Assembly (NCBI RefSeq): GCF_028641065.1
Contig: NC_073400.1
Location: 29,574,001-29,638,000 of the forward strand
Direction: 5' to 3'
Length of the DNA: 64,000 nucleotides
Source: Leucoraja erinacea
Lineage: Eukaryota
Position numbers and translations under genes: made by a program. A model generated the notes under the pieces. The model was not told where the DNA came from and did not search any database. It saw only the letters and a list, made by a program, of their open reading frames with translations. Numbering within the stretch: the stretch's first letter is position 1; each line of letters starts with the position of its first letter. This document shows positions 3,841 through 35,098 of the stretch, in pieces.

Positions 3841-3898
3841 ATGGTCTCCTTGGATAAAACTATGTGGATTCCAATGCTGCTCATTTATTCCCTGCCCG
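3841..3898 (+). CDS. Gene A exon 1: leader MVSLDKTMWIPMLLIYSLP
   Basis: ATG, hydrophobic core and phase-1 donor G|GTAAGT; homologous to the leader at 19971. Confidence 0.85.
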
Positions 3899-6800: not shown

Positions 6801-9800
6801 GGGGGCGTGGTGAAGTCCTCTGCAGATGAGACAAAGGTCAGCTGGATGGTTGACAGGGAGGAGAAGGCTTTTGACCCCAGGGCGTATATAGATGGACAAA
6901 TCAGTAGGGCAGAAAAGTGGCAAAGCCAGTTTAATCCAGAGAAGTGAGAGGAATTACATTTGACAAAGAGGTCTAAATAAAGACATTAATATATGGATGT
7001 TGAGGGAGTGTGGAGGAACAGAAGGACCTTGGGGAATATTCTCACAGCTCATTAAATGCAATATGACAATTAGTTAGTTTTAGAGATACAGCCTTGAACA
7101 GGCCCTTCGGCCCACAATGTCCAAGCCGACCAACGATTACCCGTGCACCAGTTCTATCCTACACCCTTGGGGTAATTTACAGAAGCCAATTAACTTACAA
7201 ACCTACTCATGTTTGGATTGTGGGAGGAAACTAGAGCACCCAGAGGAAACCCATGCGGTCACAGGGAGAACGTACAAATTCTGTACAGGCAGCATCCATA
7301 GTCAGGATCAAACCCGGGTCCTTGGCGCTGTAAGGCAGCCACTCTTCTGCTGTGCTACTGTGCTGCCCAACTAGTGTAAACAGTTAGGACCAAAGAACTG
7401 CAGGTGCTGGTTTGTACCAAAGATAGAAACAAAGTGCTGGAGTAACTTAGAAGGGTGTCTGAAGAAAAGTCCCAATCCCGAAACATCACGCATTCTATTT
7501 CTCCAGACATGCTGCCTGACCCGCTGAGTTACTCCAGCACCTTGTGTCTATCTTTAGTGTGAAGAGGACTCGGTGGGCCAAAGGGCGTCTTTCCATGCTG
7601 TATTTTTCAATCAATTCAATCAATAGAAAAATATCTTATGATCATTAAATTCTCCAATTTTACGTTGCACACCCCCCTACCCTCTCTCACTTTCCTGTGC
7701 ACCATTTAATCCATGCCTCTTCCTCCCTTTCACCCTGTCCCCTACCAAATATACCCCTCCCTCTGTCTTTACATTTCGGTTCTCTTCCGTCCTTATCTGA
7801 CAACCTTTTGACCGCTTTTCACCTCCAGTTTTTGTCCACTCGTGAACCAGTCAAAATTCCCCCCTCATCTGTATCCACTTGTTGTGCTGCCTGTCCCGCT
7901 GAGTTACTCCAGCAATTTGTGTCTACCTTCCACCTGTCACTTGCCAGGCTTTATCCCATCTCCACCTCTCTTCCAGCTTTCCCCACCCTACTTTAATCAG
8001 TCTGAAGCAGGGTCCCAACCCGACACGTCACGTGTCCATTCCCTCCACAGATGCTGCCAGATCTGCTGAGTTACACGGGCACTTTGTGCTTGGCTCAAGG
8101 GTAAGTGAATGTCCACACACGGGTTGGACCATTCGGCCCATCGTTGATTAGGGGAAGAGTGGGTGGGACAGCAAACGCTGTGTTAAGTAGATTTGTCCTG
8201 TACATGTTCTGATGATTTTTCTTCTCAGTTTCAGGTGCTCTGTGGGCAAAGACACCTGTAAGAGGAGTTGTGGGAAAAAATATCACAATCGATTGTCACT
8301 ATGGAGCATGGTACCGTTCACACACAAAATACTGGTGTCATGGGTGGAGTCACTGGTGTTCAGTTGTAGTGAAAACAAATGGGCAACACAGACGGAGTGG
8401 AAGATGGTCAATCACAGATAACCAGACACAAGGAATATTTACTGTGACTGTGGAGGGTCTTCTCTCTAGCGATACAGGATGGTACAGCTGTGGAATTGAT
8501 ACATCTGGCTTGGATCCAATGTTTAACGTTCAGCTCCAAGTATCTGACGGTACGTTTTACATTTATACCAAGCCAATTAACCTGTAAACCTGTACGTCTT
8601 TGGAGTGTGGGGGGAAACCGAAGTTTTCAGAGAAAACTCACGCAGGTCAGGGGGAGAATGTACAAACTCCAGACAGACAGACAAGTACCCGTGGTCATGA
8701 TCGAACCCGGGTCCCTGGCGCTGTAAGGCAGTAATTCTACAGCTGCGCCACCGTGCCGCCCTTAATGATGCACCATAGGGATCAGTGCCGGGATCTTTGC
8801 TGTTTGGCCGAATTCTGTTCTTACCCCTCCTGGGAGTGTGCAGATGATGCCCCTGGATCTTGAATAATGATGAAACGGCAAACAGGGAAATGTCTTTTAT
8901 TGTGTTGGAAAGAACTGCAGATGCTGTTTTAATCGAACATAGACACACAATCTATAGAGCAGATAGATGCGTCACTGGGTGGCGCCGAGATGGCAGCCTC
9001 GCCAGCAGCCTGTGTGTTATTTCGACTTTTTTGTTATTTTCAGTCTGTCTAAAATGTATGTTTTAATGTTTCTCTCTGTTTTTTTTATGTGGGGGGGGTG
9101 AGGGGAGGGGGGGGGGGGGGTGGGGGGGGGAGGGGGGGGGGGGGGGGGGTACTTTCCGTTGCACCGCAAGAAGGGGGGGGGGCGAAACCGTTTTCAGTCA
9201 CTTACCGCAACAGAGATGTGATCTTTCCCCGTGTCACGTCTCCGTCCCCTCCCCGCGGACTAACAACTGGATGGATGCGGCCTTTCCTGGAGACCGGGCT
9301 GCATCTTCGCCGCAAGGGCGACGCGGACTTTAACATTGCGGAGCTGTGATCCTTTGCTGAGGATCGCTGTGGAAGCTCTCCGACCGCGGGGCTTGTGGAC
9401 TTTAATACCGTGAAGCCGCGGAGAGTTTCCGTTCCGCTCCGACGCCGGAGTCTCCATCATCCCGACGAGAGGGCTTGAACATCGGGCCGTCGGCAGTGGC
9501 AGTGCTGAGGGTTCAAGGCCCCGACCACCACGGGTAAACAAAGGAGGAAGATGACTGAACCTTGTTGCCTTCCATCACAGTGAGGAATGATGATTCCACT
9601 GTGGTGGATGTTTATGTTAAAACTATTGTGTATTGCGTTATGTTTTTAAACTTGTATGGCTGTATGATAACTCAAATACCACTGTACCTTAATTGGTGCA
9701 CGTGACAATATGTGAACTTGAACTTGAAATGTTGGAGTAACTCAGCGGGACAGGCAGCGTCTCTGGAGGGAAGGAATGGGTGACGTTTCGGCCCGAGACC

Positions 9801-12800
9801 CATCCTCAGACCCGAAACTTCACCCATTCCTTCTCTCCAGAGATGCTGCCTGTCCCGCTGAGTTACTCCAGCATATTTTGTCTATCTTTAATTGTCTTTT
9901 ATTTCCTTTTCTCAACAGAACCTGAACCTAATCCTGGATCGTCAACAACAACAGTAGCACTTACTTCAACTACAAAAGTAACATCCGAAAACAATGATCA
10001 TGCGCCCAGTTCCTCTGACAGGTATAATTTTCACTTGCTTAAGTTTTGATTGGCCTTGCTTTTCAATATGAGAGGTGGAGACACAAGGAACTGTTGATCC
10101 ATACATAGATACATAGATGGATAGACAATAGTGCAGGAGAAGTCCATTCTGCCCTTCGAGCCAGCACCGCCATTCAATGTGATCATGGTTGATCATCCAC
10201 AATCAGTACCCTGTTCCTGCCTTGTCCCCATATCCCTTGATTCCGCTAGCCCTAAGAACTATGTCTAATTATCTTTTGAATGTATCCAGTGAATCATCCT
10301 GCACTGCCTTACGAGGTAAAGAATTCCCCAGATTCACAACTCCCTGGGTGAAAAGTTTTCCTCAACTCAGTTCTAAATGGCCTACCCCTTATTCTTAAAC
10401 TGTGGCCCCTGGTTCTGGACTTCCACAACATCGAGAACATGTTTCCTGCATCTCGCGTGTCCAATCCCTTAATGATTTTATATGTGTCTATAAGATACCC
10501 TCTCATCCTTCTAAATTCCAGTGAATACAAGCCCAGACGCTCCATTCTTTCATCATATGACAGTCCCGCCATCCCGGGAATTAACCTGGCTGGATGCTGG
10601 AACCTTGAGTAGAACACAAAGTACTGGAGTAACTCTAGGTTGTCGAGGGTGGCATGGTGGTGCAGCGGTAGAGTTGCTGCCTTACAATGCCAGAGAGGCA
10701 TAATCAAGGACCACTCACCCCGGTCACTCCCTCTTCTCCCCTCTGGCAAGATGTATGGAGGTTTGAAAATTCACACCTGCAGAGTCAGGGACATTTTCTT
10801 CCCAGCAGTTACCAGGCAACTGAACCATCCCCTCACCAGCTAGAGAGCGACCCTGACCTCCCATCTACCTCATTGGAGACCTTCCAACTATCTTTAATCA
10901 GACTTTATTGGACTTTATCTTACACTAAACATTCAACCCTTTAATCACAAATCTATATGCTGTGACAGCTTGATTGTAATCGTGTCTAGTCTTTTCGCTG
11001 ACTGGATAACACACAACCAAAAGCTTTTCACTGAACCTCGATACACGTGACAATAATAAGCTAAACTAAATTAACGAAACAACAGTTAAACTTGGCAGGA
11101 CATTGACACCCACCACTAGCCACATCTCCCCATCTCCACCCCTTTCTGCTTTCTGCAGAGACCGTTCCCTCCACATCTCCCTGGTTAACTCATCCCTTCC
11201 CACCCAAACTTCCCCGTCCCCAAGTACTTTCACCTGCAACTGCAGGAGATGCAACACCTGTCCCTATACCTCCCCCCTCGAATGCATCCAAGGACCCTGA
11301 CAGTCTTTTCAGGTGAGGTAGAGGTTCACTTGCAGCTCCTCCAACCTCATCTACAGTTGCAGGTGTGGACTCCTATATATCGGCAAGAATACGCACAGGC
11401 TTGGCGATCGTTTCACTGATCTCCTTCGCTCAGTCCGCTTAAACCTACCTGACCGTCCGGTGGTGAACACTTTAACTCCCCCTCCCATTCCCACGCTTAC
11501 ATTTCTGTCCTGGGCCTCCTCCTTTATCAGCGAAAATTAGGGGTAACAGCACCTCGTATTGGGCAGCTTCCACCCCAGCTGTATGAATATTGACTTCTCC
11601 AACTACAAGTAACCCTTGCTTTCCCTGACTCCATCCCATTCCCTTTCCAGTACTCCGACCAGTCTGACTCTGCCCAATTATATTTTATCTTTGTTTATTT
11701 TGTTGTTACCGTCTCCCAGCTAACAATGATCTATTCTACATTTTCCTTGATCTCCACCCCCTTTGTTTCATTTTCACACCTTACACTTCCTTATCTCTGT
11801 ATCTCCTTCTCCCCTGAAGGAGGGTCTCAATCCCAAATGTCATCCATTCCTTCTCTCCAGAGATGCTGCCTCTCCCGCCGAGTTACTCCAGCATTTTGTG
11901 TCTATCTTCTTCAGTTTTATACCAGCATCTGCAGTTCCTTCCTACACTTATTGACTGTCCACTGGTTTTGAACAAGGGGTGTTTCCTTTGTAAATCTGTA
12001 AGCTGTGAGCATTTGTAAACCAATCAGCAGATATATCGACCACGGACAATGCCACTGGCCAGATCTCACACACAATTAGTTTAGTTTTACTTTAGTTTAG
12101 AGATACAGCATGGTAACAAATCCTTCGTTCCTCCGAGTCCACGCTGTCCGTCGATCACCCTTTTATATTAGATCTATGTGATCCCGCTTTTTCATCCACT
12201 CGCTACAAATTAAGGACAATTTACCAAGGCCAATTAACCCACAAACCCGCACGTCTTTGTGATGTGGGAGGAAACCGGAGCACCCGGAGGAAACCCACTT
12301 CATCACAGGGAGAATATGCAAACTCCTTACAGACAGCACCTGTAGTCTGGATTGAACCTGGGTCTCTGGCTCTGTAAGGCATCAACTCCATGCTGCGCTA
12401 CTGTTGGGTTGAGTTGGGTTTATTCTTTATCCAACATCACAATCATTGGTCGTTATCGCACTGCTGTTTGTGGAACTTGCTGTGGGCAGATTGGCTTTGG
12501 TGTTTACCACATTACAGCAATGTGTGCACTCCATTGACTGGGCTTGACTTATCCTGAGCTCATGAAAGATACCCTGCAGATGTTAGACTTTTGTTCTTTA
12601 CCAAAGGATAGGAATCAATGATGAAACAAGAGTAACCTTTTTGCTTTCTCTGTCCCATAGACCCATAATTTGGCTCGGTATTGCTGGAGTTCTTCTCGTG
12701 GTGATATTTGCTGGTCTACTTTGGTGCCTAATGTGTAGACAAAGGAGTGAGTTTCTATGTTTCCTTCATCCTTTCATGATGTATGTGATCATTTCCTGCA

Positions 12801-14520
12801 GAGAGGGAGAGAGATACAGCATGGAAACAGGCCCTTTATCAACCATCTCTTTATTCCAGTCCTACAATAATCTTATCCAGTCTGAAGAAGGGTCCCGGCC
12901 TGAAATGTCACCCACCCTTTTCGTCCAGAGATGCTGCCTGATCCATTGAGTTACTACTTTGTATCTATCTTTGGTGTAAACTAGCATTCTTAACAGTCAT
13001 TCCTAACTGTCACTGTTTGTCGTTGTCACTTGCGGGGGCGGAGCACCAAGGCAAATTCCTTGTATGTGAATACTTGGCCAATAAACTTATTCATTAATTC
13101 ATTAATCTGCAGGTCCTTTCTACACACTAATTTTATTCAACTTTGTTCTCTCCATGTTGTTATCAATTCCCCCAAGATTCTACCCCTCGCCTACACACTA
13201 GGGGCAATTTACAGTGGGAATTAACCTACAGGCGTGCATGTCTTTAGGATGTAGGGGGAAACCGGAGCACCCAGAGGTAACCCACCTAGTTGGGCTTGTG
13301 GTTCTCATGAATAAAAGTGTAGGAAGGAACTGCAGATGCTGGTTATACACCTAAGACAGATTGAAGATGCTGGAGTAAATCAGCAGGATAGGCATCTCTG
13401 GAGAGAACGGTCTGAAGAAGGGTCTCAACCTGAAACGCCATCCATTTCTTCTCTCCGGAGATGCTGCCTGTCCCACTAAGTTACTCCAGCATTTTGTGTC
13501 CATCTTCGGTTTAAACCAGCATCTGCAGTTCCTCCCTACTCTATATGCATCAAGATGGCTGGTTAAAAATGTCCCTGACATGTTCTTTCAATGTTAACAT
13601 TGTGTTTTCCAGAATCAGAAGGGAACAAACCTCCCGGAGCAAATAACAATGAAATGCAGGTAAAGACGGCAAAGTATGAATTCTCCGTGTATTGAGAACT
13701 TACAAAATTCTGTAATCCAACCTCACTAATCAAGTCACTAATCTGCTTCAATGGTTCTATGGTTCCTTTATCATCAAACGCATCAAGATGCATCAAGGTT
13801 ATTTTATGCATACAGATCAGACGATTATTTCAAAGGAACAGGGTTCTAATTTTGGATGATCAGCCATGATCACATACACAGCAGCTCGTTCCATACACCC
13901 ACCACACTTTGTGTAGAAAGTTACCCCTTGGGTTCCTATTAAATCTTTCCCCCCCTCATCATAAACCTATATCATCTGGTTCTCGATTCTTCTACTCTAG
14001 GCAAAAGGCTCTGTGCGTCTACCCGATCTTTTCCTCTCATGATTTTGTACACCTCTATCAGATCACCCCTCATCCTCCTGCACTCCAAGCGTCCTGGCCT
14101 GCTCAACCTCTCCCTATAGTTCACGCCCACGAGTCTGGGCAACATCCTTGCAAATCTTCTCCGCACCCTTTCCAACTTGACAGCATCTTTCCTATGACAT
14201 GGTGACTAAAACTGAACACAAATCATCGGACAAACCTTGGTTCCTCTTTTGTTTTTCAGGGTTTGCCAGCAGGAAAACGGAGCATCGTTTATGCAACACT
14301 GTCAGACATTCGAAGCAACAAGGAAGCTGCCCATTGTTCTAATCAATATCAAACTGTGTATGCAGAAGTGCAAGTTCAAAGCAAATCGACAGGGTCTCAC
14401 TCCAGTACTGGGGAGGACAATGTCACCTATTCAGAAGTTACATCTCAAAGCGTCAGCCAGATTGCCCGTCAGAAAGCTCCTTCTCCTGTGCAGAGTATTT
14501 ATGCCACTGTGACTTCTTAG
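3841..14520 (+). CDS. Gene A: CD300/pIgR-like (CMRF35/MDIR-like) inhibitory receptor, spliced join(3841..3898,8229..8549,9919..10021,12661..12746,13613..13659,14260..14520), 291 aa
   Basis: All six exons have GT/AG sites with compatible phases (1,1,2,1,0). The total is 876 nt, open to TAG. Domain order: signal peptide, V domain with KYWC-x6-C extra disulfide, S/T stalk, uncharged TM, Tyr-motif tail. Confidence 0.88.
6066..6780. mobile_element. Nested CR1-type LINE 3' fragments (a plus-strand piece inside a minus-strand copy)
   Basis: GVQRRFTRLIPGMAGLSY.ER...SRTRGHSLRIRG in both orientations. Confidence 0.75.
8229..8549 (+). CDS. Gene A exon 2: Ig V-set domain, CD300/pIgR type
   Basis: ITIDCHY...KYWCHGWSHWC...GRWSITDN..GIFTVTV...DTGWYSCGI; acceptor ttctcag, donor G|GTACGT; overlaps ORF 8270..8587. 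Confidence 0.95.
8556..8762 (-). mobile_element. V-SINE (HE1-like) fragment immediately 3' of the gene A V-exon donor
   Basis: Reverse complement of the SINE head and core. Confidence 0.8.
8972..9728 (+). mobile_element. GC-rich non-coding interspersed repeat with (AACTTG)n tail, probable non-autonomous retroelement
   Basis: Related copies at ~42575-43000(-), ~46858-47556(-), ~60115-60645(+) and ~63590-64000(-). Confidence 0.6.
9919..10021 (+). CDS. Gene A exon 3: Ser/Thr/Pro-rich stalk EPEPNPGSSTTTVALTSTTKVTSENNDHAPSSSDR
   Basis: Pyrimidine tract plus caacag acceptor; donor AG|GTATAA; phase 1 to phase 2. Confidence 0.85.
10105..10590 (-). mobile_element. CR1-type LINE 3' fragment
   Basis: RLIPGMAGLSYDERMERLGLYSLEFRRMRG in ORF 10309..10749. 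Confidence 0.8.
11105..11945 (+). mobile_element. Degenerate Penelope-like element (GIY-YIG region plus pLTR)
   Basis: CNCRRCNTCPY, LLYIGK...RLGDRF; ends in the ccagcatctgcagttcct pLTR sequence. Confidence 0.75.
12661..12746 (+). CDS. Gene A exon 4: transmembrane segment PIIWLGIAGVLLVVIFAGLLWCLMCRQR
   Basis: Acceptor tcccatag, donor A|GTGAGT; about 23 uncharged hydrophobic residues followed by basic residues. Confidence 0.9.
13613..13659 (+). CDS. Gene A exon 5: juxtamembrane cytoplasmic exon KSEGNKPPGANNNEMQ
   Basis: ttttccag acceptor, CAG|GTAAAG donor; its phase 1 to phase 0 structure joins exons 4 and 6 in frame. Confidence 0.8.
13875..14220 (-). mobile_element. CR1-type LINE fragment
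   Basis: ERVRRRFARMLPRL...YRERL...RMRGDLIEVYKIMRG. Confidence 0.75.
14260..14520 (+). CDS. Gene A exon 6: cytoplasmic tail with IVYATL, TVYAEV, VTYSEV, SIYATV (ITIM/ITSM)
   Basis: gtttttcag acceptor; corresponds to ORF 14263..14520; four Tyr motifs match the ITIM or ITSM consensus. Confidence 0.9.
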   Translation, partial: GLPAGKRSIVYATLSDIRSNKEAAHCSNQYQTVYAEVQVQSKSTGSHSSTGEDNVTYSEVTSQSVSQIARQKAPSPVQSIYATVTS

Positions 14521-19970: not shown

Positions 19971-20028
19971 ATGGGGTCTGCATCTAAAACGATGTTGGTG
20001 CCAATTCTTCTCATTTGTTTCTTGCCCG
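19971..20028 (+). CDS. Gene B exon 1: leader MGSASKTMLVPILLICFLP
   Basis: Same length (58 nt) and phase as the gene A leader; donor G|GTGAGT. Confidence 0.85.
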
Positions 20029-26000: not shown

Positions 26001-27027
26001 CTCCTCCCCTTCCCAGCTCTCCCTCAGCCCTCGGGCTTCTCCTCCTCCTAACCCTAACCCCCCACCAGTCTGAAGAAGGGTTTTGGCCCGAAACGTTGCC
26101 TATTTCCTTCGCTCCATAGATGCTGCTGCACCCACTGAGTTTCTCCAGCATTTTTGTGTACCTGGGATTTTCCAGCATCTGCAGTTCCTTCTTAAACATC
26201 TCTTGACTCTTGACTTGGACGTAAGCATGAAAGGGTTCTTGGGGAAAAAAGAGGTACCTTAAATTTAGTTGCGTCTGTTTGGGTAACTATGGTAGGGTGA
26301 AGACTATTCCATGCTTTAATTGTGCGGGGTTACTCCATGGAGCAGCCAGCAACTCTGGATAGAAGAAATTGGGTGACGTTTCGGGTAGAGACCCTTCTTT
26401 ACCCTCCCTCTGGTTTTAGTGTTTTTAGTTTAATTTAAAGATACAGCGTGGAAACAGGCCCTTCGGCCCACCGAGTCCACGCCGACCACCGATCACCTGT
26501 ACACTAGTTCTATCCCACACATTAGCGGAGTAAGTCAAGAGTCAAGAGTGTTTTGTTCACTCACGTCCCAGTTAGAACAATGAAATCCTTACTAGCAGCA
26601 GCACAACAGAATATGTAAACATAGTACTCTGTAAACAATGTTATAAACGAGAAAACAGAACGGNNNNNNNNNNNNNNNNNNNNNNNNNNNNNNNNNNNNN
26701 NNNNNNNNNNNNNNNNNNNNNNNNNNNNNNNNNNNNNNNNNNNNNNNNNNNNNNNNNNNNNNNNNNNNNNNNNNNNNNNNNNNNNNNNNNNNNNNNNNNN
26801 NNNNNNNNNNNNNNNNNNNNNNNNNNNNNNNNNNNNNNNNNNNNNNNNNNNNNNNNNNNNNNNNNNNNNNNNNNNNNNNNNNNNNACGTATCTCCTCAAA
26901 AACCTGACACAAAAAAGCGGAGATTTTTACAATTTCCGTAGCGATTTATCTTAGGAGTTCAGAAATCCATTCCTTGGTCAATTATTTCCCCAGATTTTGA
27001 ATAAATCTCTCTCCCCACCCCTCCCCC

Positions 27028-27067
<40 letters not shown>

Positions 27068-30000
27068 CACCTCTCTCTCCTTCTCTCCCCCACCTCTCTC
27101 TCTCGTTCCCTCATCTCCGTCTCCCTCCCCCCCCCCCCCCCCCTCTCTCCCCCCCCCCTTCCCTGTACCCCCCTCCTTCCCTGCCCTCCCCCCCTCCCTC
27201 CCTCTTCCCCCCTTCTCTCTCTGCCCTCACTCTCTAACCCCCCCCCCCCCTTCCTCTCTAGACGCGCCTGCGAGTTGGGGGCTATGCGTCAGTAGATAGG
27301 GCGGTTGTGGGGTAAAAGGAGCAAATGAATAATATTAATATATTGACAAGGGGGGGTTAGTTAGCGTGTGTGCGAGGGGGTAGTTAGTGTGTGTGGGGGT
27401 GGTTAATGTGTGTGACGCCGCATGCCACTCCCCCCCCCCCCTCTCCCCTCGCAACCGCACGTTGGGGGTACATACACAACGGGTCTCCACTTGGTCTAGT
27501 TACGCTTCAAATTCTCAAATTGACAAGAGGTCCGTTTTGTTTAAAATTTAGATGTTTATTTTGTTAGTTCACTAATCCTCGTGGGTAGAATGTTGGTCAA
27601 CAGCGCTCCCGCAATGAGTAATCATTTACTTCTCATTTTGTTTTGCCTCTGTTGTGCTTTTGTCTAATTCAGCAAGGCCCAGCCTTAACCCTGATGCTGT
27701 TGTGAAACTGATTGTGAGTGAGAGGGGATCACTATCCAGAATCCCATATATTTTCCTGGACGTATTTTCTCACTCGGTCATTAAAGCGAGCCATTTAGTT
27801 GGTAGCTATAGTGAGGTAATTTGCCGAATATTGTACTCTGTGGTCTCCTTCCATTCACAACTGCTGGATCTTCTGGGAAGTCACCAGCCGACACTAAGGC
27901 CGGGAGATGCCGCTCCCAGCAGCGTGACGAGCGATAGAAACGCCGGCAATGCTGAGGGGGCAGAGACAATGTTGGTTTGGAAGATAGACACAATATACTG
28001 GAGTAACTCAGCTGGTCAGACAGCATCTATGGAACTAAGGGATAGGTGCTGTTTCGAGATCTAGACTCTTCTACAGAGTCAGGGGAAATGGAAGAGGTAT
28101 AGACGGTTGTGTAGAGAGATATAGAACAAATGAATGAAAGATATGTAAACAAGTAACAATGGTAAAGGAAACAGGCCATTGCTGTGCGGTGAGTGAGAAC
28201 TAGTTACAGACAATGAGATTCAACAAGAAGCTGGTGCAACTTGGGTAGGGGAGGGATGGACAGAGGGGGGGATGTAAGGTTTACTTGATATCAATATTCA
28301 TACCATTGAGGTGTAATTTGCCGACGGGAAATATGAGATGTTGTTTCCTACCACTAGGTTGGAGATGGCAGAGACGTTTCCAATTGAAACGAGGGCAAGT
28401 CCATTCAGTGATGGATGATCTGGTCCAGTGTTGGTGCGGGGGTGAATGTTGTCCAACACACCCCTCATCATTCCGAATATTCAGCTGATTTTTCCTGTTC
28501 ATTTTCAGAAGATTTGACCTCTCAGTTTCAGGTGCGGTGTGGGGGAAGGAACATGTAAGAGGAGTTGTGGGAAGAGCGATCACAATCGATTGTCACTATG
28601 AAGCAAAGTACCGCTCACACACAAAATACTGGTGTCAAGGGTGGACCCGCCATTGTATAGTTGTATTGGAAACAAATGGGCAACACGGACGGAATGGAAG
28701 AGCGTCAATCACCGATAACCCGGCACGAGGAATATTTACCGTGACTGTGGAGGATCTTCGCTCTGGAGATACTGGATGGTACAACTGTGGAATTACTACA
28801 TCTGGCTACGATCCATTGTTTAACATTTATCTCCAAGTATCTGACGGTACGTTTCGCAGCGATTGACTTGACGTCTCCACTGAAATGCCTGATCCATGTT
28901 TTCTCCGGGAAGGGTCAGGGCAGCACCGATATCCCGAGGCTCCGCAGCAGTGCAGAGACCTGCGGGGAGCGGGCGGGGGTCGGGAAACCCCACTCATGTT
29001 GCTCTCACCCAGTGCCGGCTCTGTCCCGCTCAGCACATTTCCCTGCCTCTGAACTGTATGAAATGTCACCCTGTCAGAGGTTTGCATTCCCACTAAAACT
29101 AATAATCCGACAGATCAGGTAGAAACAAGTGGTCTGGTCTGAATACCTGGAGAATCATAAACAGGGAATCAGTCCCGTGAGTTCAACAGACTGCATTCAA
29201 TACTCCCGGGGCAGGCCAGCCCGCACCCCGCCCCCACCTCAGGGACCATACACCCTCTCCCCACCCAGCGGTCTCTCTCCCTCTATCCCGTCAATGCGCC
29301 CCCACCCCCAGCAGCCACTCACCACTGACCACCCACCGCCCGGCAGCCAGCCAGCCTCTCCACCCGGCCCAATCTCGGTGGAAATTTGAGTAAAGCAATC
29401 CTAATCAGACCTTTCAGGAAACTCCCGGCGACCTCCAGCTTCCCCGAGTTTCTGGGATTCTCAGACTGACAATATCTCTCGCTGTCTCCACCCCGATATC
29501 AGCATCAGTGGGTTCCCTTCCTGTTGCAGGTCACTTAATCCAAGCACAACTATAGCCTCTCTCTATAGCCACCGAACATTGGACAGGTGTACGACACGTG
29601 AACAAAACCATAAGTGCTGGAAGAACTTAGTGGGTCAGGTAGCATCTGTGGAGGCAATGGACAAAACCAACTCGAGTCTGAAGAAGGGTTTCGGCCCGAA
29701 ACGTCGCCTATTTCCTTCGCTCCATAGATGCTGCTGCACCCACTGAGTTTCTCCAGCATTTTTGTGTACCTTCGATCTTCCAGCATCTGCAGTTCCTTCT
29801 TGAACACTCGAGTCGTGACCCTCCTTCAGACAGACGGAATGAGGGAGGAGAAAACTGGAATTGAGAGATGGGAACGGCACNNNNNNNNNNNNNNNNNNNN
29901 NNNNNNNNNNNNNNNNNNNNNNNNNNNNNNNNNNNNNNNNNNNNNNNNNNNNNNNNNNNNNNNNNNNNNNNNNNNNNNNNNNNNNNNNNNNNNNNNNNNN

Positions 30001-33000
30001 NNNNNNNNNNNNNNNNNNNNNNNNNNNNNNNNNNNNNNNNNNNNNNNNNNNNNNAGACGGGTGGAGTGATATAAGTGAGGAGGAGACCAGATAAGGAGAG
30101 GAGGAACAGTGAAATGTGAAGCAGGATTGAGGGAGGGATGGAGGGATGGAATTGACCGCGTGGAGGGGAACGGGGGCGGTATACAAAGGAAACGGGGAAC
30201 TCGGTGGGAGATGTGACGAGTTTATGAATGTACAGAAGCGGGGATGGTGGAAGGGTGGCTGGGATGGGGTGGAAGTTTCATGGGGGGGAGGGACGGTAGT
30301 GAGGCATTAATTGAAATCCGCGAATACAAATGTTCATACCGTTGCGTTGGCCGATTGTTAAGGGGAATATGAGTTGCTGTTTCTGTTTCAAAATAGTTTT
30401 GGCAATGGATGGACCTAAACAGGACAGAAAGGGGTGAACGGGAAGGTGACGTAAACGATTAGCAACCAGCATCCCCAGGCTCGCTCGTGGCAAGTGTTCA
30501 GCGAACCGGTCTCCAAGCCTCCGTTTGGGCTGGCCGATGTCAAGGTCGAGGTCATATTGCGAGCACCGAAGGCAGGAGACGAGGTTCGCGTGTACCTCTT
30601 CAAAAGTCGAGGTACAAGGGTGCCAGAATGGGAGAGTCGTTTATATTCAGGTGTTGACTTTGTATCCATTATTTGCTCCTTTCCCACAGAACCTGTGTCT
30701 GTTCCTGTGCTTGGATTACTATCACCAGCCAATGTCCCCAGTGTCGGAGGCTCAGTGACAATGTCCTGTAAGTCTGAGCGGGGATCTCTTCCCATTCGCT
30801 ACACCTGGTATGAAAATACCTTAAAGATCTCAAATAACAACCTGGATCTACGTTGTCAATACTTCAAACAACAAAGCCATCAATATTACTGCAAAGCCTC
30901 AAATAATAACGGGACAGAGTCCAGTGAAATGGTCACTGTGGCAGTGTCCAACACCGGAGAGAATTGCAGTTATATGGTGCATTTCGGTAACAATGGTAAG
31001 TACGAAACGTTACCCTGCCCAGGGCCCCGAAATCTAGGGGCCTCGGCCAAAGCAGGGCTCGAAATTTACTGTTGCCCAGGTGCCAATGGCCATCTAACGT
31101 CCTGCCGGGCAACCTAAAAGTTTTGTCATTTTGCCTGGCATGGCAAGCACCCGGGACACCTGCCGTTTAACTCTGAGTGAGTCCCCTCTTTATCTCTCTC
31201 TCTCTGTTACTCTCCGTCTCCGCCCGCCATCCGTGTCTGGGCCGCCGGGCTCCTCGTCCGCCGGCACGGCCGGCCGCCTCGCACATGCGCACTGCTACGG
31301 CCAGCACATCTTCCCCCTGCACATGGGGTAGAGAGGGAGGGATAGATCTGCCGTGATTGAATGGTGGAGCAGACTGTTTGGTCAGTCCCATATCTGAGGA
31401 AGGATGTGCTTGTTCTGGAGAGGGTCCAGAGGAGGTTTACATGAACGATCCCAGGAATGAGTGGGTTAACATTTGATGAGTGTTTAAGAGGGAACTGCAG
31501 ATGCTGGAGAATCGAAGGTTACACAGAAAAGCTGGAGAAACTCAGCGGGTGCAGCAGCATCTATGGAGCGAAGGAGAAGGGTTTCGGCCCGAAACGTTGC
31601 CTATTTCCTTCGCTCCATAGATGCTGCTGCACCCGCTGAGTTTCTCCAGCTTTTCTGTGTAACATATGATGAGTGTTTGACAGCACTGGGCCTGTACTCG
31701 CTGGAGTTTGGAAGGGTGAGGGAGGCCCTTTTTGAAACTTACTGAATAATGAAAGGCCTGGATAGAGTGGATGTGGAGAAGATGTTTCCACTAGTGAGAT
31801 AATCTAGGGCCAGAGGTCATAGCCTCAGAATTAAAGAGTGTTTCTTTAGGAAGGAATTCTTAAGCAAGACGGTAGTGAATCTGTGGAATTTATTGCCACA
31901 GAATATTGTGGAGGCCAAGTCAATGGATATTTTAAGGCGGAGATAGTACGGGTATCAGGGGTTATGGGGAGAAGGCAGGAGAATAGGGTTAGGAGTGAGA
32001 GATAGATCAGCCATGATTGAATGATGGAGTAGACTTGATGGGCCGAATGACCTAATTCTGCTCCTATCGCTTATGAACATGAACTGATGAACTTGATGTG
32101 CCAAATGGCCTAATTCTGCTCCTATGCCTTATGAACTTAAGATTGCAAGTGAAAAGCAGGTGATGCTGAATTGTATTTCCTTGACCCAACAGAACATAAA
32201 GTGACTGAACGAATGATGACTACACCTTTTGCAAGTACAGTAAAAAGATCCAATGAGAGTCAAAATGACTCCACCCGATCCACCTGCACTGAATGGTACA
32301 ATTATGTTATTACTGCTGTTGTGATTGGCTCTGCTTCCTTATGATATTTAATTGGAAGAGAATTTCCTCTTTCATTTGCTAGTTAAGTGCATCAGAGTAT
32401 TGACTTCAATCGATTCAAATGTTGAGATCGGAGTACGAGAATGATCTAAGATCCAGCATACACTCAATGGGCCAAATGGACTCTAGCTATTTTTTTGGGT
32501 TTTTAGTTTTAAAGAAACAGCACGGAAACAGGCCCTTCCACCCTATGAGTCCATGACATCCATAGATCAGTCTGAAGAAGTGACTCAACATGAAAAACAT
32601 CATCTATTCCTTCTCTCCAGAGGTGCTGTCTGACCCGCTGAGTTACTCCAGCTTTTTGTGTCGATCTTCCATCCCCCCGTTAACATTAGTTCTGTGTTGT
32701 ACCACCTTATTGTTCACTTCCTACACATTAAGGGCGATTTTACAGATGCCAATTAACCTCCAAACCCGCATGCCTTTAGGATGTGGGAGCAAACCAGAGC
32801 ACCTGCAGGAGAACCACGCGGTCATAGGGAGAATGTAGAAATCCACGCAGATAACATCCTGAGTTCAGGATCGAACCCAGGTGTCTAGCGCCTTAAGAGA
32901 GCAGCTCTATCAAATGTGTCAATGTAACAAAAAAAAGATGAGAGAGTAATTTTTGATTCATCTCTTGATGATACACCTCCATAAGATCACCCCTCGTCCT

Positions 33001-34443
33001 CCTGCTCTCCAAGAAATAATCACCTAGCTTGCTCAACCTTTCCCTATACATCAGTCCCTCGAGTCCCGGCAACATCCTCGTTAATCTTCTCTGCACCCTT
33101 TCCAGCTTGACAAAATCTTTCCTGTAACATGGCGACCAGAAATGCACACAATACCCTCAATGTGATGAGGTTCCAGGGTTACGCAGAATGACATCTGATC
33201 ACATAGGATTTAAGGCACAGAAAAGATCAACTGAACTGGTCCCATGCTGGTGTTTACATACCACTCGTCACTTCTCCCATCTTTTTTTATCTAACTTTAT
33301 CAACGCTAGACACAAAATGCTGGAGTAACTCAGCGAGTCAGGCAGCATCTCTGAAGAACATGGATAGGTGAAGTTTCGGGTCGAGATCCTGGACGGTGGA
33401 ATTTCCCAGGTGAACTACCTGGGCTCTGTTGCTGTACCCTGCTCCATGCAGAGATTTCACAGCAATCAGGCTATGAATGTTTCCAACACGAACAAGTCTG
33501 TTTCCTCCCACTGATTCTGTATCTTTCCCCCTTTGCTCAGTTACACGATATGGAATGTGGGACGCTGGCTGTACTTCGCTCTGCTTGGGATCTGCAGCAT
33601 CTCAGTCTCATTGTTCACAAGTATAAGGAAGGTATGTTTTGCGGAGATCATCAGAATCGCTGAATGCTTCCAAATGCTGTCCATTAATACCTTCAAACAT
33701 GCTGATAAAATAAAACAAACGAAAAGCGTTTAGATAAAGTACTTCACAAATATAGGCCAAACCAATGCTCTACGAAGATGATATCAATTGGTCTTGACAA
33801 GATGTTTGTGTGCAGAATGAACTGAAGTGTTTGACGTAGATGTTGTAGTGTCATTGAATCAGAGAAATACAACTGGGAAACAGGCCCTTTGACCCACTGT
33901 AACAAACGCAGACCATCTTATCTGAACCCAGTTCCCTCTCCTCTACTTTCAGTTTGAAGAAGGGTCCCGACCTGAAATGTCACCCATCCTTTTTCTCCAG
34001 AGATCGTGCCAGACTCGCTGGGTTACTCCAGCACTTTGTGCCGATCAGGCCATTGATCACCCGTACGCATTAGTTCGATGTTATCCCATTCTCTCATCCC
34101 AACTCCCAACACACTAGGGGAAATTCACATTGGCCAATTAACCTGCAAACCCACAAGTCTTTGGGAGGTGGGAGGAAACCGGAGCTCGCGGAGGAAACCC
34201 ACATGGCCACAGCGAGAACATGTAAACTCCACACAGATAGCATCAAAGTCAAAATCCAAGCAAATTCTTGGACGCTGTGAGGCAGCAGCTCTATCAGCTG
34301 CATCACTGTGCCAATTGGAAGCAGAATTCTGTTGTTAGTGGCCTTGTGAAATACAGCACAATTCCCAGAGTCAATTAATCTGATGACTTCTAAGTTTTTT
34401 TTTGCAGGGACCCATTGAACCAAAACCTCACAGCTTGCCGTAG
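19971..34443 (+). CDS. Gene B: two-Ig-domain (V + C2) activating-type CD300/MDIR-like receptor, join(19971..20028,28526..28846,30690..30995,32193..32295,33541..33631,34408..34443), 304 aa
   Basis: Phases 1,1,1,2,0 are compatible and the 915 nt are open to TAG. Caveat: N-gaps in introns 1 and 2 could hide exons or join two genes. Confidence 0.78.
21031..25203 (-). mobile_element. Degenerate DIRS1-like tyrosine-recombinase retrotransposon in gene B intron 1
   Basis: Minus-strand motifs: RT (IIIDLISLNKSVEYIHFKMET, ASIDMEDA, PNGLTSA, LDDILI ~23110-23450), RNase H (DASTLGWG ~22780), methyltransferase-like PPFCLI/VPDRPTQPWFP (~22180-22265) and YR C-terminus (WLKQV...PHST ~21310-21370). CCGAAGT is repeated at both ends. 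Many frameshifts. Confidence 0.8.
25252..26198 (+). mobile_element. Penelope-like element with inverted 5' pLTR
   Basis: GIY-YIG ORF 25679..25990 (IYCIRCSRCQLIYIGETKRRLGDRFAEHLRS) flanked by oppositely oriented copies of the pLTR/hammerhead unit. Confidence 0.85.
26664..26885. other. Assembly gap (222 N)
   Basis: Run of N. Confidence 1.
26886..27499 (+). mobile_element. Possible non-autonomous Helitron-like repeat with internal (CT)n/poly-C
   Basis: Ends in ...ccacttggtCTAG followed by T; low-complexity interior; no coding evidence. Confidence 0.3.
28526..28846 (+). CDS. Gene B exon 2: Ig V-set domain, CD300/pIgR type
   Basis: ITIDCHYEAKYRSHTKYWCQGWTRHC...DTGWYNCGI; 321 nt like gene A; same splice-site context; ORF 28537..28866. 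Confidence 0.95.
29674..29708 (+). ncRNA. Minimal hammerhead-ribozyme-like motif (Penelope pLTR type)
   Basis: CUGAAGA-AGGGUUUCGGCCC-GAAA-CGUC: conserved core boxes, near-palindromic stem II, palindromic ACGU stem III and a GUC cleavage triplet. Confidence 0.55.
29881..30054. other. Assembly gap (174 N)
   Basis: Run of N. Confidence 1.
30690..30995 (+). CDS. Gene B exon 3: Ig C2-type domain (FcRL/PECAM-like GSLPIRYTW motif)
   Basis: EPVSVPVL...GGSVTMSCKSERGSLPIRYTWY...YYCKASNNNGTESS; acceptor ttcccacag, donor G|GTAAGT; phase 1-1. Confidence 0.92.
32193..32295 (+). CDS. Gene B exon 4: stalk EHKVTERMMTTPFASTVKRSNESQNDSTRSTCTE(C)
   Basis: Acceptor resembles the gene A stalk acceptor; same length (103 nt) and phase 1 to 2; donor GTACAA is weak. 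Confidence 0.75.
33541..33631 (+). CDS. Gene B exon 5: TM with arginine, YTIWNVGRWLYFALLGICSISVSLFTSIRK
   Basis: Long pyrimidine tract plus cag; donor AAG|GTATGT; lies within ORF 33533..33733. Confidence 0.88.
34408..34443 (+). CDS. Gene B exon 6: short tail GPIEPKPHSLP*
   Basis: Poly-T tract plus gcag acceptor, phase 0, TAG at 34441-34443. Confidence 0.65.
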   Translation, partial: GPIEPKPHSLP

Positions 34444-35098
34444 AAGGCAGAATGAAGATCCACTGGTGATAGTGACTGAGAAACAACTCTCCAACAAGAC
34501 CAAATGATCATTATTATTTTGAATGAATGAATGATTGAAATAATTAATTAATTAATACTTTATTGTCACGTGTGACAAGTCACAGTGAAATTCTTTGCTT
34601 GCTAACCCAAGGTATGCAAATAGTCGCCCATAAAGGGCATTGACAAAGTGTTTTTCATTTTGCTTTCATAATAGACTGCACAGAATTAATGCTTCTTCTG
34701 CTAAAATTATTAACTTAGTTTACACAATATTCACTCAGTAAAGGTGCCATTTAAACAATGTTGCTAGCCTTTATAGCAATGACTTATTATTTTGTGTTGT
34801 GTAGCATGACATTGCAGTTATGTGGAATAAATTGTATTCAATCCTGGAAATGCCTCATGGTTTTAACTGTGAAGAATATTTAGAAGAGGGAAACTATAAG
34901 CTATGACATCCCATCAGATCAAATGTTCTGGAAGTACTTTTTCTCATGAGAACATCACTGTAATATACTTTGCTGAGCTGTTTTCAAGTCAAGTCTGTCA
35001 TTCTTATGTGCACGTATGGTGAGGTGCAGATACAATGAAAATCACGCTTGTGGCAACATCACATACACGTAGACACATAAAAATATAAATGATACATA

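What the first reader, a model, noticed from the sequence alone, without database searches (positions are those of the whole stretch)
28526..33631. Gene B is a mosaic: CD300-type V domain + FcRL-like C2 domain + LILR/FcaRI-type NxxR transmembrane segment
Seen: a phase 1-1 C2 exon (SCKSERGSLPIRYTWY...YYCKASN) sits between the V and stalk exons and is absent from genes A and C. The TM begins YTIWNVGRW. Established: most activating mammalian CD300s carry a mid-TM lysine and commonly pair with DAP12, whereas an N-terminal TM arginine in a YTxxNxxR context marks FcR-gamma-coupled receptors (LILRA, FcaRI, GPVI, OSCAR, NKp46). GS.PI.Y.W/F is characteristic of FcRL/PECAM-type domains. Inference: exon shuffling joined modules that are split among the CD300, FcRL and LRC families in mammals, and B probably signals through FcR-gamma.
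Basis: partly seen in the sequence, partly recalled or inferred. Interest (0 to 1): 0.75.

Follow-up and report, generated by a model that had tools for sequence, protein, structure and literature searches.

The report
Activating skate MDIR immune receptor gene
This is an intact gene for an activating-type immune receptor of a skate family described in 2006 (MDIRs), whose V-plus-C2 build and arginine-bearing membrane anchor are the family's normal design across sharks and rays, so it is a new member of a known kind rather than a one-off mosaic.

Summary
Observation confirmed. All the exons described are there, open and bounded by GT-AG sites with fitting phases. With a leader (19971-20028) and a tail exon (34408-34443) that I added, they make a 915-nt reading frame.

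The N gap (29881-30054) lies inside the V-C2 intron. Continuity across it could not be tested.

- **V domain:** CD300/pIgR-type.
- **C2 domain:** its nearest solved relative by sequence is human FCRL5. Fold searches only say "C2-set Ig".
- **TM exon:** it does read YT..N..R.

Interpretation partly supported. This is not a mosaic special to gene B.

- V + C2 + arginine-TM (or ITIM tail) is the standard build of an elasmobranch-wide paired-receptor family that includes clearnose-skate MDIR2 and MDIR5.
- B's ectodomain is closest to an ITIM-bearing protein named Leucoraja erinacea (V 86%, C2 91%), so B looks like its activating partner.
- The R-W membrane anchor is also in gene C and in single-V relatives.
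- The Asn of "NxxR" occurs in only 3 of 35 family TM segments. The acidic C-end of the LRC-type TM is missing.
- Coupling to a gamma/zeta-type adaptor is a reasonable, untested inference.

RNA reads were too sparse to show any exon-exon joint. Verdict: new member of a known kind, modest interest.

The parts
19971..20028 (+). Candidate leader exon of gene B (ATG; hydrophobic signal peptide; ends in phase 1 at ccc g|gtgagt)
   Evidence: tblastn of family leaders (weak: E 0.22-0.27) and direct reading. Its 5' flank resembles that of gene A's leader. Assignment to B rests on position and phase only.
26664..26885 (.). Assembly gap inside the predicted leader-V intron of gene B
   Evidence: N run listed. 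Not filled, not searched.
28526..28846 (+). V exon (phase 1-1), CD300/pIgR-type V-set domain with four cysteines
   Evidence: Pfam V-set E 3.5e-12. PDB: pIgR D1 i-E 1.8e-13, CLM-1/CD300f E 6.6e-22, CD300a 6.4e-18. 86.4% identical to the V of P0174.
29881..30054 (.). Assembly gap inside the predicted V-C2 intron
   Evidence: Its left edge adjoins a SINE-like repeat (29675-29806). Continuity unknown.
30690..30995 (+). C2 exon (phase 1-1): C2-set Ig domain plus a Cys-containing extension (ENCSY...)
   Evidence: Pfam Ig_2 2.9e-7. PDB best is FCRL5, best single domain i-E 1e-7. 91.2% identical to P0174, 89.2% to P0011, 72.3% to MDIR2. AF2 model pLDDT 82 gives a generic C2-set fold.
32193..32295 (+). 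Stalk exon (phase 1-2), ends ..STCTE + 2 bases
   Evidence: 91.7% identical to residues 230-265 of P0011. Phases read.
33541..33631 (+). Transmembrane exon (phase 2-0), YTIWNVGRW..., Arg near the outer end
   Evidence: 96.7% identical to the TM of P0011 and P0193. R-W core shared by 35 family segments.
34408..34443 (+). Tail exon: 11 codons (GPIEPKPHSLP) and stop; no tyrosine motif
   Evidence: Acceptor tttttttgcag|gg, phase 0. Matches the C-terminus of P0011 and P0193 (61% over 18 residues, E 0.015-0.03).

Best explanation
Gene B is an intact six-exon gene for an activating-type member of the elasmobranch MDIR (modular domain immune-type receptor) family. The window is most likely from the little skate.

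Its product would be a type I membrane protein made of:
- a signal peptide;
- a CD300/pIgR-like V domain;
- an FCRL5/CD22-like C2 domain;
- a short Cys-containing stalk;
- a membrane anchor with an arginine near its outer end;
- a short tail without any signalling motif: about 5 residues after the membrane on the TM exon plus 11 on the tail exon.

Its ectodomain is nearly the same as that of an ITIM-bearing paralogue of the same species (P0174). The two would therefore bind the same or similar ligands and send opposite signals, which is the classic paired-receptor arrangement.

Because B has no signalling motif of its own, it most likely assembles through the membrane arginine with a dimeric ITAM adaptor that carries paired aspartates near the top of its TM (FcR-gamma or zeta type).

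**Shown:** the exons, their phases, the domain types, family membership, and the inhibitory twin.
**Inferred:** that the six exons are one transcript; expression; the adaptor; the ligand.
For: **Gene model**
- Six open exons with GT-AG sites. Phases 1 / 1-1 / 1-1 / 1-2 / 2-0 / 0 add up to 915 nt.
- P0011 (Amblyraja radiata, 305 aa) has the same order of parts. It is 89% identical in the C2, 92% in the stalk and 97% in the TM, with the same tail.

**Family**
- MDIR5 and MDIR2 of Rostroraja eglanteria are among 63 relatives of P0011.
- MDIR2 is 75% (V) and 72% (C2) identical to B's exons.

**Paired receptor**
- P0174 (named Leucoraja erinacea, ITIM-like IMYAAV and VTYANV) is the nearest protein in both domains, at 86.4% and 91.2%.
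- It is sister to B in both domain trees.

**Spread of the architecture**
- Of 61 fetched proteins that pass a crude V+C2 motif filter, 22 have an R-W TM, 20 have ITIM-like motifs and 19 have neither.
- Their named sources are skates, rays, a sawfish and sharks.

**Membrane arginine**
- Arg is the 8th residue of the TM exon, before about 20 hydrophobic residues.
- NxxR-TM Xenopus receptors bind FcR-gamma (PMC2413239, passages).
Against: **No transcript evidence for this gene**
- In four RNA runs, mean depth on the exon bins was at most 4.5, and 0 on the 3' half of the V exon.
- None of the 15 joints shown (of 396) is a joint of the model.
- All 15 reads over 33546 carry T, not the window's C. 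They may come from an allele or from a near-identical paralogue.

**No database protein for gene B**
- No protein equal to gene B's product appeared among the hits.
- No short fragment appeared.

**Uncertain joins**
- The leader is assigned by position only.
- Two assembly gaps lie in its introns.
- P0011 joins a leader and V of gene A's type to B-type C2-to-tail parts. So another exon combination is conceivable.

**Adaptor choice is weakly constrained**
- LMIR8, with a TM lysine, uses FcR-gamma (PMC5974347).
Confidence: 0.75

Rival explanations
1. The V-B exon and the C2-stalk-TM-tail exons are not one transcript. The C2-to-tail exons might be spliced to another leader and V, for example gene A's, 22 kb upstream, as the A. 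radiata model P0011 suggests. V-B would then be an alternative, orphan or decaying exon.
For: - P0011 has a leader 100% identical (19 of 19) to gene A's.
- Its V is 83.7% identical to V-A against 77.9% to V-B, while its C2-to-tail parts match B.
- All V and C2 exons are phase 1-1, so any such join stays in frame.
- An assembly gap sits between V-B and C2.
- No V-to-C2 joint was seen in RNA.
Against: - V-B is open, has all four cysteines and canonical splice sites, and lies 1.8 kb upstream of C2 with a leader of its own type further upstream.
- Its nearest relative, P0174, has V and C2 adjacent. So do MDIR2 and dozens of other family proteins.
- Gene A has its own downstream stalk, hydrophobic TM and ITIM-like exons with fitting phase.
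- P0011 may itself be a chimeric automatic model. The AU test does not reject its V grouping with V-B (p 0.07).
Confidence: 0.12
2. One reading: gene B is a recent mosaic made by exon shuffling from three otherwise separate families (CD300 V, FcRL C2, LRC-type NxxR TM).
For: - Each part has its best non-elasmobranch match in a different mammalian family.
- Genes A and C next door lack the C2 exon.
- The YT..N..R string matches the DYT/NxxR description of LRC TMs (PMC6557307).
- Symmetric phase 1-1 exons make shuffling easy.
Against: - The same V-C2-(R-TM or ITIM) build is present in sharks, rays and skates, so it predates this gene by far.
- The R-W TM occurs without the C2 in gene C and in P0193, P0194, P0203 and P0205.
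- Asn at -3 is found in 3 of 35 family TMs. The others are K 15, S 6, T 4, D 4, M 2, E 1.
- There is no acidic residue at the TM's C-end.
- There is no two-exon FCRL-type signal peptide (against the PMC2413239 passage).
Confidence: 0.05
3. Gene B is a silent or decaying copy (a young pseudogene) in a fast-turning multigene cluster. The reads on its exons come from near-identical paralogues.
For: - Very low read depth on its exons.
- No read covers the 3' half of the V exon.
- 15 of 15 reads over 33546 differ from the window.
- No database protein matches it.
Against: - No stop, frameshift or broken splice site in 915 nt over six exons.
- The tissues of the four runs are unknown, and only 5-32% of each run was read.
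- Immune receptors of this kind are often restricted to a few cell types.
Confidence: 0.08

Closest known systems
MDIR2 and MDIR5 of the clearnose skate (modular domain immune-type receptors; Cannon et al. 2006, Immunogenetics 58:362)
   Same: - The same two domain types in the same order, with the same V|C2 junction (..QVSD|E.VSVPVL..).
- MDIR2 is 75% (V) and 72% (C2) identical to B.
- MDIR5 ends in the same kind of R-W TM and a short tail.
- The family is described as multigenic, with activating and inhibitory forms and similarity to CD300, TREM, FCAR and pIgR (PMC3031540, passages).
   Different: - MDIR2 has an uncharged TM and an ITIM-bearing tail.
- MDIR5 has V-C2-V-C2.
- B combines the MDIR2-type V-C2 ectodomain with the R-W TM.
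- MDIR1, which I recall as having a charged TM residue, was not retrieved.
- The 2006 paper is not held. Its content is recalled or second-hand.
P0174, 'uncharacterized protein LOC129708882' [Leucoraja erinacea] (automatic RefSeq model)
   Same: - Nearest protein in both ectodomains: V 86.4%, C2 91.2%.
- Sister to B in both trees.
   Different: It has an uncharged TM and a long tail with ITIM-like motifs. It is the inhibitory counterpart, encoded outside this window.
P0011, 'CXADR-like membrane protein' [Amblyraja radiata]
   Same: - Same overall build and length: 305 aa against 304 codons.
- C2 89%, stalk 92%, TM 97% identical, with the same tail.
   Different: - Its leader and V are of gene A's type.
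- Its name is an automatic label that fits neither the family nor the domains.
Mammalian CD300/CMRF35 (LMIR/CLM) receptors and pIgR domain 1
   Same: - V domain with the same four cysteines.
- CLM-1 E 6.6e-22, CD300a 6.4e-18, pIgR D1 i-E 1.8e-13.
- Clustered activating and inhibitory pairs that use FcR-gamma or DAP12 (PMC5974347).
   Different: - CD300s have a single Ig domain and no C2.
- LMIR8's charged TM residue is a lysine.
- Orthology and synteny were not tested.
FCRL5 (membrane-proximal repeats) and the NxxR 'TM1' of LRC and Xenopus FcR-like receptors
   Same: - The C2 aligns end to end with FCRL5 repeats and shares GS.PI.Y and YYC.A.N.
- Mammalian FCRL5 models are 34-39% identical.
- The TM has an N-terminal Arg with Asn at -3 and YT before it. 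Xenopus FcR-like genes also combine FcR-like C2 domains with an NxxR TM (PMC2413239).
   Different: - CD22 d6-d7 scores not much worse (E 4.8e-6).
- Fold searches do not single out FCRL.
- No two-exon signal peptide.
- No acidic TM C-end, and the Asn is not conserved in the family.

Membership tests
MDIR family (elasmobranch modular domain immune-type receptors) | Significant full-length similarity to named MDIR proteins | tested here: met
   MDIR5 (E 2.9e-166) and MDIR2 (E 9.2e-106) are hits of B's near-orthologue P0011. B's own exons are 75% and 72% identical to MDIR2.
MDIR family (elasmobranch modular domain immune-type receptors) | Ectodomain built from the family's Ig modules (CD300/pIgR-like domain and FcR-homologue-like domain) in variable number | tested here: met
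   V-set and Ig_2; pIgR/CLM-1; FCRL5. Relatives have V-C2, V-V-C2 and V-C2-V-C2 builds. The definition itself is recalled from the 2006 abstract and from the PMC3031540 passages.
MDIR family (elasmobranch modular domain immune-type receptors) | Multigene cluster with charged-TM and ITIM-bearing forms | tested here: met
   In the window, gene A is followed by an uncharged TM exon (12662-12749) and an exon with four Y-motifs (14259-14520). B and C have R-W TMs.
MDIR family (elasmobranch modular domain immune-type receptors) | Transcribed as one mRNA | tested here: inconclusive
   exon depth at most 4.5, and no model joint among the 15 of 396 joints shown.
CD300/CMRF35 family | CD300-type V domain with two disulfides | tested here: met
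   The four Cys align with those of pIgR D1. CLM-1 E 6.6e-22.
CD300/CMRF35 family | Single Ig domain ectodomain | tested here: not met
   A C2 exon lies between the V and stalk exons.
CD300/CMRF35 family | Orthology or conserved synteny with the mammalian CD300 cluster | not tested
   No flanking non-Ig genes were examined.
FCRL family | Ig domains of FcR/FCRL subtypes | tested here: inconclusive
   By sequence, FCRL5 repeats are best (i-E 1e-7), with CD22 d6-d7 at 4.8e-6. Foldseek found no hit with E <= 0.001. VIA gave tied generic C2 domains, Z 7-8.9, with FCRLA D2 at Z 7.1.
FCRL family | Signal peptide split over two exons (second one 21 bp), as stated for FCRL1-6 and Xenopus XFL genes | tested here: not met
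   In the model, one 58-nt leader exon joins the V exon directly. The rule is taken from the PMC2413239 passage. The leader assignment is itself inferred.
NxxR 'TM1' transmembrane subtype (LRC, Xenopus FCRL/SLAM-like) | Arg near the N-terminal end of the TM | tested here: met
   YTIWNVGRW at 33542-33568.
NxxR 'TM1' transmembrane subtype (LRC, Xenopus FCRL/SLAM-like) | Conserved Asn three residues before the Arg | tested here: inconclusive
   Present in B. Found in only 3 of 35 family TM segments (K 15, S 6, T 4, D 4, M 2, E 1).
NxxR 'TM1' transmembrane subtype (LRC, Xenopus FCRL/SLAM-like) | DYT consensus before the TM and acidic residue(s) at its C-end (PMC6557307 Discussion passage) | tested here: not met
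   YT is present but is preceded by Cys, not Asp. The TM ends ..LFTSIRK with no acidic residue.
NxxR 'TM1' transmembrane subtype (LRC, Xenopus FCRL/SLAM-like) | Sequence homology to LRC TMs, and binding of FcR-gamma | not testable with these tools
   No LRC TM sequence was available from a tool. phmmer of the TM exon against PDB chains gave 0 hits at E <= 10. Binding needs an experiment.

The most novel reading that the evidence does not exclude
The W...R-W membrane anchor of elasmobranch MDIRs is the cartilaginous-fish homologue of the tetrapod NxxR/'TM1' FcR-gamma-coupling module. Gene B and its A. radiata counterpart would then preserve the ancestral YT..N..R form.

If so, one gamma/zeta-coupling TM exon was already being passed among CD300-like and FcR-like ectodomains before cartilaginous and bony vertebrates split. 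The passages read trace that module back only to amphibians and birds.
Probability: 0.15. Interest if true: 0.55.

Novelty: new member of a known kind. Interest (0 to 1): 0.3.

Why it matters
- **Annotation.** It adds an apparently unannotated activating partner to an inhibitory MDIR2-type receptor of a skate. Current automatic names for this family ('CXADR-like', 'pIgR-like', 'Fc receptor-like 5', 'CMRF35-like', 'uncharacterized') hide one coherent, elasmobranch-wide paired-receptor family.
- **Testable system.** The pair B / LOC129708882, with 86-91% identical ectodomains and opposite tails, offers a clean way to ask which adaptor an outer-leaflet arginine recruits in a cartilaginous fish. 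It also lets one ask what the ligand of MDIRs is.
- **Limit.** It does not change the picture of how CD300, FCRL and LRC families relate.

Tried and rejected
**RNA evidence for the V-C2 joint**
- The four runs were swamped by SINE-like repeats, with depth up to about 1000.
- Exon depth was at most 4.5.
- Only 15 of 396 joints are printed, and all of them are between repeats. Inconclusive.

**Short assembled protein fragments spanning exon junctions (C2 exon as query)**
- 3 candidates, none with E <= 1e-10.

**Orthologous A. radiata locus**

**Structure route for 'FcRL-like'**
- The AF2 model of the C2 exon reached pLDDT 82.3 in one of five models. The other four were 38.8-41.5.
- Foldseek against PDB found no match with E <= 0.001. 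The top matches were PKD and FN3 domains, FCRLA D2 and Fc-gamma-RI at E about 0.02.
- VIA wide search gave generic C2 domains (CEACAM, MDGA1, NTB-A, CD48, CD22), Z 7-8.9, all tied.
- The fold therefore does not discriminate.

**TM exon against PDB sequences**
- Nothing found.

**MDIR1**
- Not found with P0011 or P0193 as queries. The length limits of that tool apply.

**Cannon 2006 and Cannon 2010**
- Not held.

**Adaptor genes in cartilaginous fish**
- The literature search gave only unrelated cancer papers. The presence of FcR-gamma, zeta or DAP12 in skates is unchecked here.

**Domain-tree discordance of P0011**
- The AU test gave p 0.07, and the group was named after seeing the tree. Suggestive only.

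**Rejected readings**
- Rejected: that the C2 came with the TM from an FcR-like gene. The TM occurs without the C2.
- Rejected: that NxxR is a family signature.

Full report
**What is there**

- V exon, 28526-28846. It is a 106-codon V-set domain (Pfam V-set E 3.5e-12) with four cysteines.
- C2 exon, 30690-30995. It is a C2-type Ig domain (Ig_2 E 2.9e-7). It carries SCKSERGSLPIRYTWY...YYCKASN, followed by a Cys-containing extension.
- Stalk exon, 32193-32295.
- TM exon, 33541-33631, beginning YTIWNVGRW.

All borders are GT-AG.

I added two exons.
- A leader at 19971-20028. It has an ATG and a hydrophobic signal peptide, and ends in phase 1.
- A tail exon at 34408-34443: 11 codons, no tyrosine, then a stop.

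The six pieces sum to 915 nt, which is in frame. All searches were exon by exon or used database proteins.

**The gap**

The N run 29881-30054 lies in the predicted V-C2 intron. It is 1035 nt after the V donor and 635 nt before the C2 acceptor, so no codon crosses it.
- Its left edge adjoins a SINE-like repeat that occurs many times in the window.
- I could not test whether the two sides are contiguous or whether an exon is hidden there.
- A second gap (26664-26885) lies in the leader-V intron.

**Neighbours**

On the same strand the window holds three genes.
- Gene A:
  - leader 3842-3898;
  - V exon, coding stretch 8228-8548;
  - stalk 9918-10022;
  - an uncharged TM exon at 12662-12749, whose phase fits the stalk;
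  - an exon with four tyrosine motifs at 14259-14520.
- Gene B, described above.
- Gene C: V 55304-55639, then a TM exon that reads ..NFIWSILRW.. and stops four codons after the membrane.

The C2 exon is unique in the window. It is truly absent from A and C, since their V-to-next-exon stretches hold no N.

Gene A's leader, V and stalk are 100%, 100% and 98% identical to the RefSeq protein P0202. That protein is named Leucoraja erinacea. The window is therefore most likely little skate, which agrees with other notes of this scan.

**What the parts resemble**

- V domain. The best solved relatives are pIgR domain 1 (i-E 1.8e-13), CLM-1/CD300f (E 6.6e-22) and CD300a (6.4e-18). NKp44 and TREM2 follow.
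- C2 domain by sequence.
  - The best solved relative is human FCRL5. The best single repeat has i-E 1e-7, and six repeats align end to end, sharing GS.PI.Y and YYC.A.N.
  - FCRL4, titin and CD22 d6-d7 (E 4.8e-6) follow.
  - In the 1.84-billion-protein search, the non-elasmobranch hits that I looked up were mammalian FCRL5 models (34-39% identity), fish 'CD22-like', 'sialoadhesin-like' or 'hemicentin-2-like' proteins, a spider titin and one unnamed protein.
- C2 domain by structure. This added nothing specific.
  - The model's pLDDT was 82 in one of five models.
  - Foldseek found no match with E <= 0.001.
  - VIA-align listed generic C2 domains at Z 7-8.9, all tied.

So 'FcRL-like' is the best label by sequence, but not an exclusive one.

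**The family**

The same search found P0011 (A. radiata, 305 aa), which has V, C2, stalk..YMIWNVGRW.. TM and the same tail. It is 89% identical to B in the C2, 92% in the stalk and 97% in the TM.

Searching with P0011 gave 63 relatives. Among them are 'Modular domain immune-type receptor 5' and '2' of Rostroraja (Raja) eglanteria. The others are automatic models from skates, rays, a sawfish and sharks, plus one weak teleost (tarpon) hit. These carry names such as pIgR-like, CMRF35-like, Fc receptor-like 5, CXADR-like or uncharacterized.

What the literature says about MDIRs:
- The original paper (Cannon et al. 2006) is not held. What I say of its abstract is recalled.

How the architecture is distributed:
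- Of 61 fetched proteins passing a crude V+C2 motif filter, 22 carry an R-W TM, 20 carry ITIM-like motifs and 19 carry neither.
- The V-C2 build with either ending is thus the family's norm, not a feature of gene B.

**Paired receptor**

B's nearest protein in both domains is P0174 (named L. erinacea LOC129708882). It is 86.4% identical in the V and 91.2% in the C2. It has an uncharged TM and a long tail with IMYAAV and VTYANV.

In quick trees:
- V-B is sister to P0174's V (SH-aLRT 90), with MDIR2 next.
- C2-B forms a starred clade with P0174 and P0011, inside a starred clade with MDIR2 and P0038.

B is therefore best read as the activating partner of an MDIR2-type inhibitory receptor.

**The membrane anchor**

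The literature passages confirm the background.
[quoted passage not shown] Xenopus FcR-like receptors with it bind FcR-gamma (PMC2413239).
- Further listed features are a DYT consensus before the TM and acidic residues at its C-end (PMC6557307).
- CD89 binds the gamma dimer through an arginine near the top of its TMD (PMC13107469).
- NKp30 and NKp46 use zeta or zeta/gamma and likewise have an arginine in the top half of the TMD (PMC13107469).
- Receptors that assemble through DxxxT/S motifs, the motif type given there for DAP10 and CD3, otherwise use a centrally placed lysine (PMC13107469).

Against a specific LRC origin:
- Among 35 R-W TM segments in 34 of the 215 fetched proteins, the residue at -3 is K 15, S 6, T 4, D 4, N 3, M 2 and E 1.
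- The TM ends ..LFTSIRK without an acidic residue.
- The same TM type serves gene C and single-V relatives that have no C2.
- Homology to LRC TMs could not be tested. No such sequence came from a tool, and the TM exon finds nothing in PDB sequences.
- Mammalian CD300/LMIR receptors themselves use FcR-gamma or DAP12. LMIR8, with a lysine, uses FcR-gamma (PMC5974347).

**RNA**

One search for runs gave no listed holder on record as RNA; the raw-read RNA runs were added for sharing a small-share holder's species label. I laid four of them on 28480-34479.
- Repeats dominate, with depth up to about 1000.
- Exon bins have mean depth 0-4.5. The 3' half of the V exon has none.
- None of the 15 joints printed (of 396) is a joint of the model.
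- All 15 reads over 33546 carry T instead of C (X11 3/3, X15 1/1, X18 8/8, X20 3/3). That would change Thr to Met, as in P0011 and P0193. These reads may come from another allele or from a near-identical paralogue.

Indirect support for one transcript is comparative. It comes from the adjacency of V and C2 in P0174, MDIR2 and dozens of relatives, together with the fitting phases.

**A real hint of module exchange, at another level**

P0011 combines a leader identical to gene A's with B-type C2-to-tail parts. Its V is of A's type: 83.7% identical to V-A against 77.9% to V-B, and in a 95-supported clade with V-A.

P0193, an assembled transcript-like protein, combines an A-type V and stalk with the B-type TM and tail.

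Because all V and C2 exons are phase 1-1, such combinations stay in frame. They could arise in three ways:
- true exon exchange or conversion between neighbours;
- alternative splicing;
- chimeric automatic models.

The AU test does not reject placing P0011's V with V-B (p 0.07, and the group was named after seeing the tree).

**Mechanism, with odds**

- Shown: an intact gene for a type I protein with a V-C2 ectodomain, an outer-leaflet arginine and a signalling-free tail; membership of the MDIR family; and an inhibitory twin.
- Inferred, about 0.75: it is expressed as one transcript and acts as the activating partner.
- Inferred, about 0.5 given that it is expressed: the arginine recruits a gamma/zeta-type dimer rather than DAP12.
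- Ligand: unknown.

**Novelty**

This is a new member of a known kind.

Noticed in passing
window 3842-3898, 8228-8548, 9918-10022, 12662-12749, 14259-14520 (+): Gene A looks like a complete inhibitory single-V receptor. The stalk exon ends in phase 2, and an uncharged TM exon 2.6 kb downstream starts in phase 2. An exon with four tyrosine motifs (IVYATL, TVYAEV, VTYSEV, SIYATV) follows. The RefSeq model P0202 (169 aa, 'CMRF35-like molecule 1') instead reads through the stalk donor to a stop. It may therefore be truncated, or it may be a soluble form. The phase between the TM exon and the tyrosine-motif exon does not fit directly, so a small exon may be missing.
   Followed up: partly
window 55304-55639 and 58130-58231 (+): Gene C has a more divergent CD300-like V exon (about 38-40% identical to V-B). 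Its TM exon reads ..NFIWSILRW.. and stops four codons after the membrane. It is an activating-type single-V receptor with the same R-W anchor but no Asn at -3. Its leader and stalk exons were not located.
   Followed up: partly
window 33546: All 15 RNA reads covering this place, in four runs, carry T where the window has C. This would change Thr to Met (YT.. to YM..), the residue found in P0011 and P0193. It is either an allele or transcripts of a near-identical paralogue's TM exon.
   Followed up: no
P0011 (A. radiata) and P0193 (assembled-run protein), compared with window 3841-3897, 8228-8548, 9912-10025, 30689-34440: Relatives combine gene-A-type and gene-B-type modules. P0011 has A-type leader and V with B-type C2, stalk, TM and tail. 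P0193 has A-type V and stalk with B-type TM and tail. This could be exon exchange between neighbours, long-range splicing, or chimeric models. AU test p 0.07.
   Followed up: partly
window 29675-29806, 31575-31661, 32564-32669, 33299-33390, 33943-34046 and many more: A roughly 100-nt SINE-like repeat core occurs in both orientations all over the window. It is very abundant in RNA reads, with depth up to about 1000 on each strand. It drowns out the gene's own signal and sits at the left edge of the assembly gap.
   Followed up: no
window 30690-30995 (C2 exon), residues 55 and 92 of its translation: Besides the canonical Cys pair (26 and 67), the family keeps two more cysteines. Cys55 (..DLRC..) is invariant, and Cys92 (..ENCSY..) is present in at least 90% of 28 aligned rows. 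The FCRL5 repeats aligned lack them. A family-specific extra disulfide that staples the C-terminal extension is possible, but was not checked on the model.
   Followed up: no
window 32296-32347 (+): If the stalk donor is not used, the frame runs on for 17 codons, 16 of them past the exon's end, through a hydrophobic stretch (..YNYVITAVVIGSASL) to a stop. This could be chance, or an alternative hydrophobic or GPI-signal-like C-terminus.
   Followed up: no
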